DNA of 64,000 nt, taken from IMG/VR virus record IMGVR_UViG_3300045999_008996, positions 158,564 through 222,563 of that record. One strand, given 5' to 3'. Under the pieces are notes generated by a model that was given only the letters and a program-made list of their open reading frames with translations, did not search any database and was not told where the DNA came from. Each line of letters begins with the position of its first letter. The stretch's first letter is position 1. Both the position numbers and the translations under genes were made by a program. Shown piece by piece: positions 21,454 to 26,747 of this stretch.

Positions 21454-21541
21454 TACGAGTGGGTGGATTCGAACCACCTCAAAGCCGCTAATCTGGCGGA
21501 AAGGCGTTATAAGTGCCCTCTGACTACCAAGTCTCACTCGC
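21454..21541 (-). tRNA. Atypical 88-nt tRNA, anticodon TAT (Ile), long variable arm, 4-nt D loop
   Basis: GCGAGTG/CACTCGT acceptor; GACT-TGGT-AGTC; loop CTTATAA; GGTGG-TTCGAAT-CCACC. Confidence 0.7.
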
Positions 21542-21579
21542 TTGAACCAGGTCTATTATAGAGGACCTGGAACTCTATG

Positions 21580-21810
21580 TCAAGAACCTTCTTCGTGGTC
21601 AGTGTGTATTCGTATCATATCATCATCCACTTTAGATTCTACTGCAAACTTTATAGTTTCGTTATATGGAACAATCACTGCGTTTCTTTCTCCATCAGTA
21701 ATAATAAATGATTCGCCGTTCTCTACTCTTTGTATTAGATTGTCAAAATCTACTTGAAACTCTTGAACTGTAAATTTTTGGAGATCTGAAAGTTCTGGAT
21801 ACATTTTCAT
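21580..21810 (-). CDS. Phd/YefM antitoxin-like protein
   Basis: FTVQEFQVDFDNLIQRVENGESFIITDGERNAVIVP matches the Phd N-terminal pattern. Confidence 0.6.
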   Translation of the reverse strand: MKMYPELSDLQKFTVQEFQVDFDNLIQRVENGESFIITDGERNAVIVPYNETIKFAVESKVDDDMIRIHTDHEEGS

Positions 21811-22239: not shown

Positions 22240-22318
22240 AGTATCCTCCTCTTGTTCCGAAATAGAGTGTTGTTAAAACAAACGGAATAGAAATGAAAAT
22301 AAGTGCTTTACCTAACAT
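22199..22318 (-). CDS. ndhP: NDH-1 complex subunit NdhP homolog (39 aa)
   Basis: MLGKALIFISIPFVLTTLYFGTRGGYYDSKEYKGNGTAH: TM helix plus FGTRxGxYDxxxYxGNGxAH; absent from ORF track. Confidence 0.8.
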   Translation of the reverse strand: MLGKALIFISIPFVLTTLYFGTRGGYYDSKEYKGNGTAH

Positions 22319-23330
22319 GATGTCCCCCAAACATATAACGCATTCCGTTTAGGATTTTTGCTCCGAATGATCCGAGATTGCGTGAGTTAAATCTTTCAAA
22401 TAGTGCTGTAGTAATAACAGGAGCGGGAACCCCCAGGTCCACAGCGGCAGAAACAGTCCAACGACCCTCACCACTATCGGATACTCCTCCAGAGAACTGT
22501 TTAAGGCTACCATCCCGGCGTAACACATCAGCAGTAAGATCAAGTAACCAAGACCCAACCACGCTACCGCGACGCCATAACTCAGCAACCTCAGCAACAT
22601 CAATATCATAACAATAGGATTCGGGGTCTGCCATAGGGGCGACTTCTGCATCTCCTTCTCTAACATATTTGGCACCCACATTAGCGTTCTTCAGAATGTT
22701 GAAACCTTCTGCATATGCTTGCATTATTCCATACTCAATACCGTTGTGAACCATCTTCACAAAATGTCCTGCACCTGGACCACCACAATGCAACCAACCA
22801 AACTCAGCAGAAGTTACATCCGAGTCATACTGAGTCCTGGGGGCAGCGTTGATTCCTGGAGCGAGGGCATCAAAAATGCTTGCACAAGTGGCGACCGCAG
22901 TATTTCCGCCACCAACCATAAGACAGTATCCACGATCCAAACCATAAACACCGCCGCTAGTACCACAATCAATATATTGGATACCAAGTTTTGCAAGACG
23001 CTCTGCTCTCTTCCGACTGTCTTTAAAATTGCTATTGCCATGATCAATAATAATATCTCCCTCACCACAATATCGTAGTAACTCATTGATTGTTTCCTCT
23101 ACAGTTTCTGCTGGCACAACCATTTGAAATATTCCTGGATTGCCATTACCTTTTACTACTTGAACAAGGCTTTGTATAGTAGTCGTAACACCATTAACAT
23201 ATCCGTTTTCATATGCTTCTTGAGCCTTTTCATAGTTCCTTCGGTAACCCCAAACCTCAATACCCGCTTTCATCATGCGGCGAGACATTCCTTCACCCAT
23301 TCTTCCCAAACCAATTAATCCTACTTTCAT
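22308..23330 (-). CDS. gnd: 6-phosphogluconate dehydrogenase (short form)
   Basis: GLIGLGRMG, DCGTSGG, GHFVKMVHNGIEY, DSGEGRW, FGGH. Confidence 0.95.
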   Translation of the reverse strand: MKVGLIGLGRMGEGMSRRMMKAGIEVWGYRRNYEKAQEAYENGYVNGVTTTIQSLVQVVKGNGNPGIFQMVVPAETVEETINELLRYCGEGDIIIDHGNSNFKDSRKRAERLAKLGIQYIDCGTSGGVYGLDRGYCLMVGGGNTAVATCASIFDALAPGINAAPRTQYDSDVTSAEFGWLHCGGPGAGHFVKMVHNGIEYGIMQAYAEGFNILKNANVGAKYVREGDAEVAPMADPESYCYDIDVAEVAELWRRGSVVGSWLLDLTADVLRRDGSLKQFSGGVSDSGEGRWTVSAAVDLGVPAPVITTALFERFNSRNLGSFGAKILNGMRYMFGGHHVR

Positions 23331-23422
23331 AAAACCTCCGGATATGCGTGTGTAAGTCCCCAATGTATAAAAAGTCCAATAGACGAAAAAAGAAGAATTG
23401 TAGATATTATTGTTTTAATCAT
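23327..23422 (-). CDS. 31-aa membrane peptide
   Basis: MIKTIISTILLFSSIGLFIHWGLTHAYPEVL; ATGA overlap with gnd. Confidence 0.5.
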   Translation of the reverse strand: MIKTIISTILLFSSIGLFIHWGLTHAYPEVL

Positions 23423-24355: not shown

Positions 24356-24790
24356 TCATTGCAGGTGTGCTCTTAACTGCCAAACAAACTTACCATGAGA
24401 TTCCATTAAATCTTGAACTAAATTTGCTGTAGCATATGACTTTTGATTTTCAGATTCTTCCGAAATCTCTACCATTAAATCACAAAACTTGGTATTGTTA
24501 TCAAGAAGCTCTTGAAGCATTTCTTTTGCTCCAGTTGAACTTGCTGCCTCTTTGATTTGAGTTACCTCAAGCATTCTAGAAAGAGAACTGAGAGGTTTTA
24601 CATTCAAATAACGCATATGTTCCGAAAGACGATCAATCTCTTCAAACATAGTTTCATACTGACCGCCAAAGAGTTGATGAAGTTGAGTGAAGTCTTCACC
24701 TACAACATTCCAATGAAATGCCCAAGTTTTATGGAATAAAACAAAAAGCGATGACTGTGCATCACTCAAGAGTTTATAAAGTTTTTCCAT
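24356..24790 (-). CDS. dps: Dps (DNA-protecting mini-ferritin)
   Basis: FHWNVVGEDFTQLH.LF...IDRLSE; start MEKLY. Confidence 0.85.
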   Translation of the reverse strand: MEKLYKLLSDAQSSLFVLFHKTWAFHWNVVGEDFTQLHQLFGGQYETMFEEIDRLSEHMRYLNVKPLSSLSRMLEVTQIKEAASSTGAKEMLQELLDNNTKFCDLMVEISEESENQKSYATANLVQDLMESHGKFVWQLRAHLQ

Positions 24791-24818
24791 TATACTCTTT
24801 TTATTTTTATTTATCAAG

Positions 24819-24966: not shown

Positions 24967-24970
24967 ATGA

Positions 24971-25041
24971 AGGAAGTTACTGGACTTACACCAGTTACGA
25001 GGGCATTGTCTGCTTGTCTTGATTCTTTGACTTAACTTCCT
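24971..25041 (-). ncRNA. Degenerate tRNA-like element (intact acceptor and T stems, no canonical anticodon arm)
   Basis: AGGAAGTT/AACTTCCT; ACTGG-TGTAAGT-CCAGT; GCA-GACAA-TGC. Confidence 0.55.
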
Positions 25042-25080
25042 TTGGCGTCTTTCTATGCTATCTGCATAACGACTACCAAG

Positions 25081-25152
25081 AGCGAAAGACGAGATTCGAA
25101 CTCGCAACAACCTGCTTGGAAGGCAGGGACTCTACCGTTGAGTTACTTTCGC
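25081..25152 (-). tRNA. tRNA-Gly (TCC)
   Basis: Loop CTTCCAA. Confidence 0.9.
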
Positions 25153-25191
25153 AATGAGACAATCATAAACTATTTTAGTTTGATTGTCAAG

Positions 25192-25273
25192 TGTCGATGA
25201 GAGGACTTGAACCTCCACAGATTAATCTACTGGAACCTAAACCCAGCGCGTCTACCAATTCCGCCACATCGAC
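25192..25273 (-). tRNA. tRNA-Leu (TAG)
   Basis: Type II; loop TTTAGGT. Confidence 0.9.
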
Positions 25274-25277
25274 TTGA

Positions 25278-25324
25278 TGGAGTAAGTATGATATACCTCA
25301 TAAGGATATAACAGTGACTTACCC
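25278..25324 (-). ncRNA. 47-nt armless tRNA-like hairpin with CUUAUGA loop
   Basis: GGGTAAGT/ACTTACTC outer stem, TATATC/GGTATA inner stem, ends ...CTCCA. Confidence 0.45.
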
Positions 25325-25367
25325 TCTATCATTTTATATATTAACAGACTCAAAAGAATCTGTCAAG

Positions 25368-25440
25368 CGTCCTTTGAGAGATTCGAACTCCCGCACATAG
25401 GTTCGTAGCCTACTGCTCTATTCCACTGAGCTAAAAGGAC
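25368..25440 (-). tRNA. tRNA-Arg (ACG)
   Basis: Loop CTACGAA. Confidence 0.9.
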
Positions 25441-25443
25441 AAG

Positions 25444-25515
25444 TTCTGAGGGTAGGATTCGAACCCACGAATGGCGGGACCAAAACCCGCTGCCTTACCG
25501 CTTGGCGACCTCAGA
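25444..25515 (-). tRNA. tRNA-Gln (TTG)
   Basis: Loop TTTTGGT. Confidence 0.9.
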
Positions 25516-25587
25516 AGCCCTCAATTGGATTTGAACCAACGACCTACTCATTACTAGTGAGTTGCTCTACCACTGAGCTATAAGGGC
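25516..25587 (-). tRNA. tRNA-Thr (AGT)
   Basis: ACTCA-CTAGTAA-TGAGT. Confidence 0.85.
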
Positions 25588-25589
25588 GG

Positions 25590-25660
25590 GGTGCCGTGAG
25601 GGAATCGAACCCTCATATAGAGAACCACAATCTCCTGTCTTACCATTAGACTAACGACAC
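25590..25660 (-). tRNA. tRNA-His (GTG); G-1 not encoded
   Basis: Loop TTGTGGT; C73; position -1 is T. Confidence 0.85.
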
Positions 25661-25661
25661 A

Positions 25662-25735
25662 AGGCAGTAGATAGATTTGAACTATCGACCATAGGCATAT
25701 GAGACCCGTGCTCTGCCAGACTGAGCTATACTGCC
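25662..25735 (-). tRNA. tRNA-Met or Ile2 (CAT)
   Basis: Loop CTCATAT. Confidence 0.8.
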
Positions 25736-25737
25736 AA

Positions 25738-25826
25738 CGGAAGTGGTTGGATTCGAACCAACGGATGCCTATAAAGACATCGGCGGATTAGCAATCCACT
25801 GCATTAGACCTCTCTGCCACACTTCC
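25738..25826 (-). tRNA. tRNA-Ser (GCT)
   Basis: Type II; loop TTGCTAA. Confidence 0.9.
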
Positions 25827-25828
25827 AA

Positions 25829-25902
25829 TAGGAATGGTGAGATTCGAACTCACGACCACACGATTATCAGTCGTGTACTCTAACCAACTGAGCTACATTC
25901 CT
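25829..25902 (-). tRNA. tRNA-Ile (GAT)
   Basis: Loop CTGATAA. Confidence 0.9.
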
Positions 25903-25903
25903 G

Positions 25904-25978
25904 TGGTATTCCTAACGGGATTCGAACCCGTGCTGCCACCTTGAAAGGGTGGTGACCTAACCGCTAGTCGATAGGAAC
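25904..25978 (-). tRNA. tRNA-Glu (TTC), CCA encoded
   Basis: Loop CTTTCAA. Confidence 0.9.
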
Positions 25979-25982
25979 TTAA

Positions 25983-26025
25983 TGCTGACGGCATTCTGGA
26001 TTATCAGCTCCAGCGCAAATCAGCA
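25983..26025 (-). ncRNA. 43-nt armless tRNA-like hairpin with GCUGAUAA loop
   Basis: TGCTGAT/GTCAGCA outer stem, CTGGA/TCCAG inner stem. Confidence 0.45.
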
Positions 26026-26026
26026 A

Positions 26027-26098
26027 CGACTCTAACGGGATTTGAACCCGTGATACTACCGTGACAGGGTAGCGTGATAACCGCTTCACTATAGAGTC
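26027..26098 (-). tRNA. tRNA-Asp (GTC)
   Basis: Loop CTGTCAC. Confidence 0.9.
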
Positions 26099-26102
26099 AA
26101 GG

Positions 26103-26184
26103 TGGGAGGAGCAGGATTCGAACCTGCGAAGGTAGAACCGTCTGATTTACAGTCAGATTCCTTTAGCCACTCGGAAATCCTCCC
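26103..26184 (-). tRNA. tRNA-Tyr (GTA)
   Basis: Loop CTGTAAA; variable arm. Confidence 0.9.
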
Positions 26185-26260: not shown

Positions 26261-26312
26261 TTAGAATTAAATTGTCAAGGTTCGGGGTGTGGTCTCTCTC
26301 GACCACTTGATT

Positions 26313-26366
26313 AGAATACCACCTTTTGGACTCTGGGGGGAGATTGGTGGACACTTAGGAAACTGG
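26313..26366 (-). promoter_or_regulatory. Phage promoter motif, copy 1 (upstream of the tRNA array)
   Basis: CCAGTT-N4-AAGTGTCCAC-N28-TATTCT. Confidence 0.55.
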
Positions 26367-26376
26367 TCCAAGCAAC

Positions 26377-26410
26377 AAAAAAGGGGAGGAAACTTTTGGT
26401 TTCTCTCCCC
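26377..26410 (-). terminator. Intrinsic terminator
   Basis: GGGGAG-AGAAAC...GTTTC-CTCCCC-TTTTTT. Confidence 0.75.
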
Positions 26411-26435
26411 TCTATTTGCTTTTATGGATTGCATA

Positions 26436-26552
26436 TTACATATGTCTTTCCATTTCAGCAAACAGGGGATTACCCTCAATATGCCAATCACGGCAATCGA
26501 GAGTACTAATCTGTTTGGTGGTGATTTGGAAAGACATTGTTTTCGACCTAAG
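26436..26552 (-). ncRNA. Late-promoter fold-back RNA containing a 33-codon ORF (26436-26537)
   Basis: TATAAATA 26559-26566; ATGTCTTTCCA/TGGAAAGACAT and CAAACAG/CTGTTTG stems; terminator downstream. Confidence 0.55.
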
Positions 26553-26589
26553 TGTTTTTATTTATAAGACTTTTATTTAAAAAGTCTAA

Positions 26590-26665: not shown

Positions 26666-26747
26666 GAGACCTCTCTGTTTGTGCTTCTATGAGAGGCATG
26701 AGAGGGGTGAGACTTATATGAGGTTTGGACCCTCACTGCTCATATGA
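26666..26747 (-). ncRNA. Pseudoknotted leader RNA 5' of tRNA-Arg
   Basis: ATATGAG/CTCATAT with GTGAG/CTCAC; CCTCTC/GAGAGG; TTGACA-17-TACAAT at 26750-26778. Confidence 0.45.

What the first reader, a model, noticed from the sequence alone, without database searches (positions are those of the whole stretch)
25042..26025. Armless mini-tRNA-like hairpins with Ile-type loops interleaved in the tRNA array
Seen: three 38-47 nt spacers share a 7-8 bp outer stem, an internal loop and a 5-6 bp inner stem. 25278-25324 has a canonical-looking 7-nt anticodon loop CU-UAU-GA and ends ...CUCCA. 25983-26025 has loop G-CUGAUAA, containing the exact loop of the nearby tRNA-Ile(GAU). 25042-25079 has loop A-GAU-A. 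Known: armless tRNAs of this size exist in some animal mitochondria, and host anticodon nucleases target tRNAs during phage infection. Inference: released during array processing as anticodon-stem-loop decoys, or tRNA remnants. tRNA finders would miss them.
Basis: partly seen in the sequence, partly recalled or inferred. Interest (0 to 1): 0.65.

Follow-up and report, generated by a model that had tools for sequence, protein, structure and literature searches.

The report
Conserved spacer hairpins in phage tRNAs
The three small hairpins between the tRNA genes of this freshwater cyanophage belong to three widespread, unannotated families of structured RNA; two of them display an isoleucine-anticodon-like GAU loop, so they are likely functional small RNAs cut out by the tRNA-processing enzymes, not junk spacers or working mini-tRNAs.

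Summary
The window is the end of a complete 222.6-kb T4-like cyanophage genome. Its tRNA array is on the minus strand. All three hairpins are real on that strand. None is called by ARAGORN or Rfam. Each belongs to a family found in 57 to 144 of the IMG/VR phage loci fetched, always co-oriented with the tRNAs. Helices covary: 96 to 99.6% of cells are paired, and no shuffle of 500 reached the observed score.

A (25042-25079) and C (25983-26025) start right after a tRNA 3' end. Each has a variable clamp stem and an invariant head. The A loop is AGAUA; the C loop always holds GAUAA. The A head also forms the anticodon arm of stand-alone cloverleaf tRNA-like genes in S-CBS4-like cyanophages. It also sits on a B-type base. 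A similar CAGAUUA loop forms the extra arm of long tRNA-Ile(UAU) genes, one of them in this window.

B (25276-25330) is a 5' leader hairpin. It begins just after an early promoter and abuts tRNA-Leu. Its apical loop varies and its 'CCA' is base-paired.

Not supported: decoding or chargeable mini-tRNAs, and decayed tRNA remnants. Most likely they are small RNAs released by RNase P/Z whose heads are read by a trans factor. That function is inferred, not shown.

The parts
25042..25079 (-). Hairpin A: 3' trailer hairpin starting at the nucleotide after tRNA-Gly(UCC). It has a variable clamp (P1 5 bp, A bulge, P2 3 bp) plus a head.
   Evidence: Fold; family alignment A1 and pair counts; distance to the tRNA
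25051..25071 (-). A head: 21-nt near-invariant core (CG, 6-bp stem, loop AGAUA, AA). It is identical to the anticodon arm of cloverleaf tRNA-like genes in S-CBS4-like cyanophage contigs.
25276..25330 (-). Hairpin B: 55-nt 5' leader hairpin (GAUAGAGG...CUCCAUC) ending 2 nt before tRNA-Leu(UAG).
25338..25366 (-). Sigma-70-type early promoter (TTGACA, 17 nt, TAATAT). B starts 7 nt after the -10 hexamer, so B is the predicted 5' end of the transcript.
   Evidence: the same layout in 39 of 109 distinct upstream contexts
25983..26025 (-). Hairpin C: 3' trailer hairpin between tRNA-Asp and tRNA-Glu, with a variable 6-7 bp clamp plus a head.
25989..26018 (-). C head: invariant core (UU, GCG, 5-bp stem, 8-nt loop holding GAUAA, AAUGC, CG).
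25080..25152 (-). tRNA-Gly(UCC), whose 3' end abuts hairpin A.
25191..25273 (-). tRNA-Leu(UAG), whose 5' end follows hairpin B.
26026..26099 (-). tRNA-Asp(GUC), whose 3' end abuts hairpin C.
25829..25902 (-). Genuine tRNA-Ile(GAU), with anticodon loop CUGAUAA.
21455..21541 (-). Class-II-like tRNA-Ile(UAU) missed by ARAGORN. Its extra arm (21485-21499) is a 4-bp stem with loop CAGAUUA, a further GAU loop.
26669..26705 (-). abiF RNA motif (RF03085, 41.3 bits, cut-off 37), 4 nt upstream of tRNA-Arg(UCU). It is an antitoxin-type RNA embedded in the same array.
   Evidence: function from the bioRxiv preprint read
25153..25190 (-). Gly-Leu spacer that is both a hairpin and a near-consensus promoter (TTGACA, 17 nt, TATGAT).
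24967..25041 (-). 75-nt degenerate cloverleaf after hairpin A. It recurs in L013, L003 and L195.

Best explanation
The three hairpins are members of three conserved families of structured 'spacer RNAs' of cyanophage tRNA arrays.

Shown: they are transcribed-strand-specific RNA structures under purifying selection.

Shown: A and C are 3' trailers. Each has a freely covarying clamp stem that begins right after a tRNA. The clamp carries an invariant head that looks like an anticodon arm with a GAU-containing loop.

Shown: the A head is portable. It sits on a simple clamp in T4-like arrays, on a B-type base, or as the anticodon arm of a stand-alone cloverleaf tRNA-like gene in S-CBS4-like cyanophages.

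Shown: B is a promoter-proximal 5' leader hairpin. Its paired 5' end starts at the predicted transcription start and its 3' end abuts a tRNA.

Inferred: host RNase P (5' ends of tRNAs and perhaps of the clamps) and RNase Z or exonucleases (3' ends) cut the array. That releases A, B and C as discrete 40-60 nt hairpin RNAs.

Inferred: the heads of A and C then act in trans by binding a factor that reads a tRNA-Ile-type anticodon loop. Candidates are IleRS and a tRNA-directed defence nuclease. They would act as a mimic or decoy, much as the abiF antitoxin-type RNA in the same array would neutralise an AbiF toxin.

Inferred: B mainly serves as a stable, insulating 5' clamp or scaffold.
For: 1) Recurrence and context. 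The C core is exact in 24 loci after 8 different tRNA species and after non-tRNA modules. The A core occurs in more than 119 loci after 12 tRNA species. B occurs in more than 120 loci.

2) Covariation.
- A: 96.1% of cells paired against 78.8% in shuffles; score 0.456 against 0.148; 0 of 500 shuffles reach it; 9 of 14 pairs change on both sides.
- C: 96.8% against 77.4%; 0.538 against 0.144; all 6 clamp pairs covary; the inner stem shows U-A to C-G.
- B: 99.6% against 95.6%; 0.185 against 0.110; 4 pairs with double changes.
- Slid controls are 0.17 or lower.

3) RNA level. Frequent G-U pairs occur on the tRNA strand only. Co-orientation with tRNAs is 102/0, 141/0 and 57/0.

4) Position. The A head starts 8 nt after the tRNA end in 35 of 52 cases, which is the clamp length. 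B ends 0-4 nt before a tRNA in 56 cases.

5) Head portability and swapping. Cloverleaf carriers appear. They lie in RNR / endonuclease VII / phosphoesterase synteny like S-CBS4. B-base carriers appear. The closest relatives keep the clamp but carry another conserved head with loop CGAUUAA.

6) GAU theme. The extra arm of 18 distinct long tRNA-Ile(UAU) genes on at least 4 backbones has the invariant loop CAGAUUA on covarying stems.

7) The abiF RNA sits in equivalent leader positions. It is an RNA antitoxin that binds AbiF.

8) The phage encodes no CCA-adding enzyme, IleRS or TilS, so host enzymes must act.

9) RNase P can remove hairpins 3' of tRNAs (PMC4176162).
Against: There is no direct evidence that discrete hairpin RNAs accumulate. 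The metatranscriptome material is assembled contigs of low depth spanning tRNA-hairpin-tRNA, which could be precursor or contaminating DNA. No binding partner was identified. U33 is absent from most loops, so true anticodon mimicry is uncertain. The 'GAU' theme was noticed after the fact. The scans were seeded with the conserved cores, which inflates apparent head invariance. The degenerate scans partly control for this. A purely cis role in processing, folding insulation or stability remains possible, especially for B.
Confidence: 0.5

Rival explanations
1. Cis-acting processing and stability elements only. The hairpins punctuate the polycistronic precursor. They keep neighbouring tRNAs from misfolding, give RNase P or RNase Z a defined cleavage site where a tRNA is not followed directly by another tRNA, and protect 5' and 3' ends. 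The released hairpins would have no further role.
For: They sit exactly at tRNA ends and occur where spacers are long or a promoter intervenes. Other arrays use unrelated simple hairpins at the same junctions; S-PM2 and S-CREM1 do so after tRNA-Asp. RNase P removes hairpins downstream of tRNAs in E. coli. The apical loop of B is free to vary.
Against: Structure alone does not explain 21-30 nt invariant heads beside freely varying clamps. It does not explain the same A head in stand-alone tRNA-like genes of phages without an array. It does not explain replacement of one conserved head by another on an unchanged clamp.
Confidence: 0.28
2. DNA-level mobile regulatory cassettes of the PeSL type. 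These would be promoter-plus-stem-loop units that serve as recombination joints for shuffling tRNA genes, with any RNA structure incidental.
For: The modules have a mosaic distribution next to many different tRNAs. B is tied to early promoters. The Gly-Leu spacer is itself both a promoter and a hairpin. PeSLs are described in T4-type phages (PMC2839356, PMC4122927).
Against: G-U pairs are valid only on the transcribed strand, and orientation with the tRNAs is strict. There is one copy of each module per genome, not a repeat family. Compensatory changes preserve pairing.
Confidence: 0.1
3. Working armless mini-tRNAs that are charged and/or decode, or decayed tRNA pseudogenes.
For: The size range matches armless mitochondrial tRNAs (general knowledge). 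The A head occupies the anticodon-arm position in cloverleaf relatives, which ARAGORN calls tRNA-Ile(gat) in L057, L067 and L079.
Against: There is no 7-nt loop with U33: A has 5 nt (or 7 nt with A33), C has 8-9 nt, and B is variable. There is no free acceptor end; the CCA of B is paired. No tRNA model scores them. Covariation and invariant heads exclude neutral decay. No true tRNA carries the C arm with a 7-nt loop.
Confidence: 0.03

Closest known systems
abiF RNA motif (Rfam RF03085) and type III antitoxin RNAs, including phage-encoded antitoxin mimics
   Same: A small hairpin with a variable outer stem, a conserved distal part and an A-rich bulge on the 3' side. A true abiF motif lies in this same array as a tRNA leader and in relatives after B. 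The abiF RNA binds and neutralises the AbiF toxin.
   Different: A, B and C do not match the abiF model at E up to 10. No toxin partner is known, and no cellular copies next to a toxin gene were found.
tRNA-linked small RNAs released by the tRNA-processing enzymes (murine gammaherpesvirus 68 tRNA-miRNA units, MALAT1 mascRNA, the E. coli leuZ 3' external spacer; from general knowledge)
   Same: A hairpin placed directly after or before a tRNA, so that RNase P or RNase Z defines its ends. A cloverleaf carrier of the A head gives a weak mascRNA match (30.6 bits).
   Different: Here the units sit inside a long bacterial-type tRNA array of a phage. Processing has not been shown.
PeSL promoter-stem-loop cassettes of T4-type phages (PMC2839356, PMC4122927)
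   Same: An early promoter joined to a conserved stem-loop in the plastic regions of T4-like genomes, with mosaic distribution.
   Different: There is a single copy per genome. The helices covary with G-U pairs on one strand, and the stem-loop is long, with conserved internal loops and heads.
Anticodon-arm mimics that bind aminoacyl-tRNA synthetases (the E. coli thrS operator; from general knowledge)
   Same: A hairpin showing the cognate anticodon triplet in its loop. A, C and the extra arm of tRNA-Ile(UAU) all show GAU.
   Different: Binding to IleRS is untested, and the loops lack U33 or are 5, 8 or 9 nt long.
Armless mitochondrial tRNAs
   Same: Size of about 40-50 nt, and a two-helix layout without D and T arms.
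   Different: No canonical anticodon loop, no free acceptor end and no sign of decoding.

Membership tests
tRNA (canonical or armless) | Recognised by tRNA models | tested here: not met
   ARAGORN and Rfam at E up to 10 give no hit on A, B or C. Cloverleaf carriers of the A head are called tRNA-Ile(gat) by ARAGORN only, not by Rfam.
tRNA (canonical or armless) | 7-nt anticodon loop with U33 and a conserved anticodon | tested here: not met
   A has a 5-nt loop AGAUA (or 7 nt with A33). C has an 8-9 nt loop in which only GAUAA is invariant. The B loop varies in length and sequence.
tRNA (canonical or armless) | Free 3' acceptor end fit for CCA and an amino acid | tested here: not met
   The CC of B's CUCCA pairs with the 5' GG and is followed by UC(A/U)(A/U). 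The 3' clamp strands of A and C end in varied sequence.
tRNA (canonical or armless) | Aminoacylation | not testable with these tools
   Needs biochemistry.
Decayed tRNA pseudogene | Neutral decay, with no selection on pairing and no recurrence in other contexts | tested here: not met
   Compensatory changes, invariant heads, and occurrence after 8-12 different tRNA species.
abiF RNA (RF03085) | Match to the covariance model | tested here: not met
   Only 26669-26705 matches (41.3 bits). A, B and C do not.
Type III antitoxin-like or decoy RNA | Binds and neutralises a protein | not testable with these tools
   No partner is known. The architecture is similar (variable stem, conserved distal part).
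PeSL cassette | Early promoter joined to a stem-loop | tested here: met
   B follows TTGACA, 17 nt, TAATAT by 7 nt. The same layout occurs in 39 of 109 contexts.
PeSL cassette | Many near-identical copies scattered in one genome | tested here: not met
   One copy each of A and B in the complete 222.6-kb genome.
Intrinsic terminator | GC-rich hairpin followed by a U run | tested here: not met
   The terminator scan does not list them. What follows is AGGAAG, UCAA or UUAA.
tRNA-linked small RNA | Hairpin directly abutting a tRNA end | tested here: met
   The modal gap equals the clamp length for A and C. B ends 0-4 nt before a tRNA.
tRNA-linked small RNA | Released as a discrete RNA by RNase P or Z | tested here: inconclusive
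   RNA-library contigs span 25000-25186, 25245-25419 and 25949-26107, but contigs cannot show ends or exclude DNA.

The most novel reading that the evidence does not exclude
Cyanophages use their tRNA arrays, or a stand-alone tRNA-like scaffold, as an expression and processing platform for a set of interchangeable small RNA 'heads'. The GAU-loop heads (A, A', C, and the extra arm of long tRNA-Ile(UAU)) would be isoleucine anticodon-arm mimics read by host IleRS or by a tRNA-Ile-directed defence nuclease. In trans they would act as decoys or titrators. In cis, as an added arm, they would give tRNA-Ile(UAU) an IleRS handle that its anticodon lacks.
Probability: 0.25. Interest if true: 0.85.

Novelty: new variant of a known kind. 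Interest (0 to 1): 0.72.

Why it matters
Phage tRNA arrays are usually read as codon-usage or anti-defence tRNA supplies, and their spacers are ignored. In this phage, the spacers hold at least four conserved RNA families: A, B, C and abiF. Three of them are absent from Rfam and unannotated in GenBank isolates. Their heads move between scaffolds and between unrelated cyanophage families that share hosts. That pattern points to a host-directed function, and it offers a natural counterpart of engineered tRNA-flanked RNA arrays. The recurring GAU loop, including an extra arm on tRNA-Ile(UAU), makes one question directly testable. A normal bacterial IleRS charges tRNA-Ile(UAU) poorly (PMC3575796), so how do phage AUA decoders become isoleucine tRNAs? 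Cultured carriers exist for experiments: S-SZBM1, DSL-LC02, S-SRM01, S-CREM1 and S-RIM8.

Tried and rejected
- Rfam at E up to 10 over 20000-41000 found no family for A, B or C. Rfam on carrier loci found none either.
- Nearest isolate genomes: S-PM2 and S-CREM1 have other hairpins at the Asp-Glu junction, so plain synteny comparison was uninformative.
- BLAST of C against GenBank phages gave no match.
- A bacterial-genome scan for the C core found only one phage-like MAG contig.
- A search for a true tRNA with the C arm and a 7-nt loop returned 22 hits, all coding-sequence coincidences.
- A search for a cloverleaf carrier of the C head returned 0 hits.
- The A head is absent from S-CBS4, S-SRP01, S-SRM01, S-CREM1 and S-RIM8.
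- RNA runs were held only as assembled contigs, so there was no information on ends.
- CAGATTA hairpins outside tRNAs turned out to be a conserved codon run in the RNR small-subunit gene.
- Terminators and known ribozymes were considered and rejected: no U run, and no Rfam hit.
- Literature searches found no description of these elements.
- The large protein searches, structure prediction and complex prediction were not used, because no protein partner emerged.

Full report
Setting. The window is bases 158564-222563 of a complete 222,563-bp virus record with direct terminal repeats. By DNA similarity it is a T4-like cyanomyovirus (Kyanoviridae). The best isolate match, over part of the array, is S-PM2 at 81%. 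ARAGORN finds 20 tRNA genes, all on the minus strand, and Rfam confirms them. So the three elements must be read on the minus strand. The region is dense in sigma-70-type promoters on that strand: 27 found against 12 expected, several matching 12 of 12 positions.

Observation.
- A (25079..25042) has z -4.4.
- C (26025..25983) has z -3.2.
- B (25324..25278) has z -2.3 alone and -4.6 for its whole spacer.
- Two corrections apply. The full B unit is 25330..25276, with GAU at its 5' end pairing with AUC at its 3' end. The CC of 'CUCCA' is inside the helix.
- No tRNA finder or Rfam family reports any of the three.

They are families, not chance spacers. An exact 26-nt core of C occurs in 24 IMG/VR loci. 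It follows tRNA-Asp, Asn, Leu, Thr, Ile(UAU), Ser and Ala, or a non-tRNA module, and the flanking clamp stem differs each time but stays complementary. Degenerate scans add variants:
- an inner stem U-A changed to C-G;
- first loop bases G/U/A and C/A;
- a common variant with loop AAAGAUAAA.
Only GAUAA is invariant. In the pooled loci every instance with tRNAs within 300 nt is on the tRNA strand: A 102 to 0, B 141 to 0, C 57 to 0.

Pair counts on alignments A1, A2 and A3:

| Family | Cells paired | Shuffled | Covariation score | Shuffled score |
|---|---|---|---|---|
| A | 96.1% | 78.8% | 0.456 | 0.148 |
| C | 96.8% | 77.4% | 0.538 | 0.144 |
| B | 99.6% | 95.6% | 0.185 | 0.110 |

In each family, 0 of 500 shuffles reach the observed score, and slid controls are far lower. 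Many pairs are G-U on this strand, which would be A-C on the other. This argues for an RNA-level function. A caveat: the sets were seeded with the conserved cores, so head invariance is partly by construction. The covarying clamps and the degenerate scans are not.

Anatomy and position.
- In A and C the clamp begins at, or one nucleotide after, the last base of a tRNA. The modal gap from the tRNA end to the head is 8 nt for A and 8-9 nt for C.
- The A head is CG, a 6-bp stem, loop AGAUA, then AA.
- The C head is UU, GCG, a 5-bp stem, an 8-9 nt loop, then AAUGC and CG.
- B starts 5-9 nt after the -10 hexamer of a sigma-70-type promoter in 39 of 109 distinct contexts, including the window (25366..25338). 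It starts after a short hairpin plus a TATA-rich box in 34 contexts, and directly after C in 13.
- B ends 0-4 nt before a tRNA in 56 cases. Otherwise it precedes an abiF motif, another structured module, or a ribosome-binding site.
- The B apical loop varies (UUAU, a 2-nt deletion, UGAU, UCAU), so it is not an anticodon loop.

The heads are portable.
- The A head is also the anticodon arm of cloverleaf tRNA-like genes, with G26-like and A44/A45-like flanks. L067, L057 and L079 are called tRNA-Ile(gat) by ARAGORN, and L096 and L100 are similar. It is also an arm of cloverleaf-like RNAs with a non-tRNA third arm (L038, L086, L120).
- Several of these carriers lie between ribonucleotide reductase or endonuclease VII genes and a metallophosphoesterase gene. 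That is the gene order of cyanosiphovirus S-CBS4, whose reductase is their best match. L067 also holds a glutamine riboswitch.
- So a different cyanophage family, without a tRNA array, carries the same head on its own tRNA-like scaffold.
- The A head also sits on a B-type base in L072, L113 and L130.
- The closest relatives of the window (L013, L003; about 94% identical in the flanks) keep the A clamp but carry another conserved, covarying head with loop CGAUUAA.

A GAU theme.
- The window holds an 87-nt class-II-like tRNA-Ile(UAU) at 21541..21455. ARAGORN misses it, and Rfam gives only a weak tRNA-Sec match.
- Its extra arm is a 4-bp stem with loop CAGAUUA.
- In the loci, 18 distinct long tRNA-Ile(UAU) genes on at least four backbones all have this loop on covarying stems. 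42 other distinct tRNA-Ile(UAU) genes are of ordinary length.
- Other CAGATTA hairpins are a coding coincidence.
- E. coli IleRS charges tRNA-Ile(UAU) poorly (PMC3575796), so a GAU loop as an isoleucine handle is a reasonable but untested idea.
- The phage encodes no CCA-adding enzyme, class I synthetase or TilS.

Company in the array. An abiF RNA (RF03085, above the cut-off) lies 4 nt upstream of tRNA-Arg(UCU). The same motif follows B, or precedes tRNA-Arg, in relatives and in S-SRM01. In Clostridioides difficile this motif is part of an RNA antitoxin that binds the AbiF toxin (bioRxiv 10.1101/2025.04.15.648962). So the array already carries one RNA whose known role is protein neutralisation, in the same kind of tRNA-flanked position.

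Interpretation.
- Shown: conserved, strand-specific, covarying RNA structures; exact placement at tRNA ends; modular heads.
- Inferred from established tRNA processing: excision as discrete hairpins. RNase P cuts at every tRNA 5' end and can also remove hairpins 3' of tRNAs (PMC4176162).
- Inferred from the conservation pattern, head portability and the abiF precedent: trans recognition of the heads by a factor that reads an Ile-type loop.
- B is best seen as a 5' clamp or scaffold.
- Rivals are a cis-only processing role, which is plausible especially for B, and DNA-level PeSL-like cassettes. Working mini-tRNAs or remnants are disfavoured.

Expression data are weak. RNA-library contigs cover the three hairpins together with their flanking tRNAs, but they cannot show ends or exclude DNA.

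Novelty. No Rfam family, no GenBank annotation and no paper found describes these elements. The general kinds are known: tRNA-linked small RNAs, antitoxin-like or mimic RNAs, and promoter-stem-loop cassettes. These families and the GAU-head modularity appear new.

Noticed in passing
window 26669-26705 (-): abiF RNA motif (RF03085, 41.3 bits, above the cut-off) 4 nt upstream of tRNA-Arg(UCU). It is the only copy in the genome. The same motif occurs in S-SRM01 and in several IMG/VR arrays. It is probably an antitoxin mimic against AbiF-type abortive infection.
   Followed up: partly
window 21455-21541 (-): 87-nt tRNA-Ile(UAU) with a long extra arm (loop CAGAUUA), missed by ARAGORN because of an A-C mismatch in the anticodon stem. 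It sits between a perfect promoter (21583..21555) and tRNA-Met. The long-arm form recurs on at least 4 backbones in other phage contigs.
   Followed up: partly
window 25153-25190 (-): The 38-nt spacer between tRNA-Leu and tRNA-Gly is both a stable hairpin (z -4.3) and a near-consensus promoter (TTGACA, 17 nt, TATGAT). It is conserved in L013 and in several other arrays.
   Followed up: partly
window 24967-25041 (-): 75-nt element that folds as a degenerate cloverleaf, with an 8-bp closing stem and three arms. It is not called a tRNA. It is conserved at 93-94% in L013 and L003, and its start recurs after B in L195.
   Followed up: partly
window 26261-26588 (-): 328-nt gap between tRNA-Arg(UCU) and tRNA-Lys. 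It has a strong terminator-like hairpin (about 26383-26408) and conserved hairpins upstream of tRNA-Lys. In S-PM2 the corresponding gap holds a small ATG-initiated open frame (by eye).
   Followed up: no
window 24356-24793 (-) and 22308-23363 (-): A ferritin-like gene and a 6-phosphogluconate dehydrogenase gene sit among the tRNA genes. A DPBB lytic transglycosylase-like gene and a ribonucleotide reductase small subunit lie upstream (Pfam).
   Followed up: partly
L174, L171, L232 (about 20-115 nt after B): A further recurring module of about 95 nt. It starts GUAGGAAGUGCAA and ends CCUCCUACCA, giving an acceptor-like closing stem with an encoded CCA-like end. It lies between B and a tRNA.
   Followed up: no
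L005, L006, L011, L016, L019: ARAGORN predicts permuted (two-piece) tmRNA genes overlapping or next to tRNA-Ala or tRNA-Thr in several related phage arrays.
   Followed up: no
L067:10289-10525 (-) and L067:4501-4611 (-): A group I intron (80.8 bits) and a glutamine riboswitch in the S-CBS4-like contig that carries the cloverleaf form of the A head.
   Followed up: no
L045, L064, L071, L089, L105 and others: The A head also ends a promoter-driven multi-hairpin RNA (TATAAT, then a CCCC...GGGG hairpin, then further helices) in yet another group of viral contigs.
   Followed up: no
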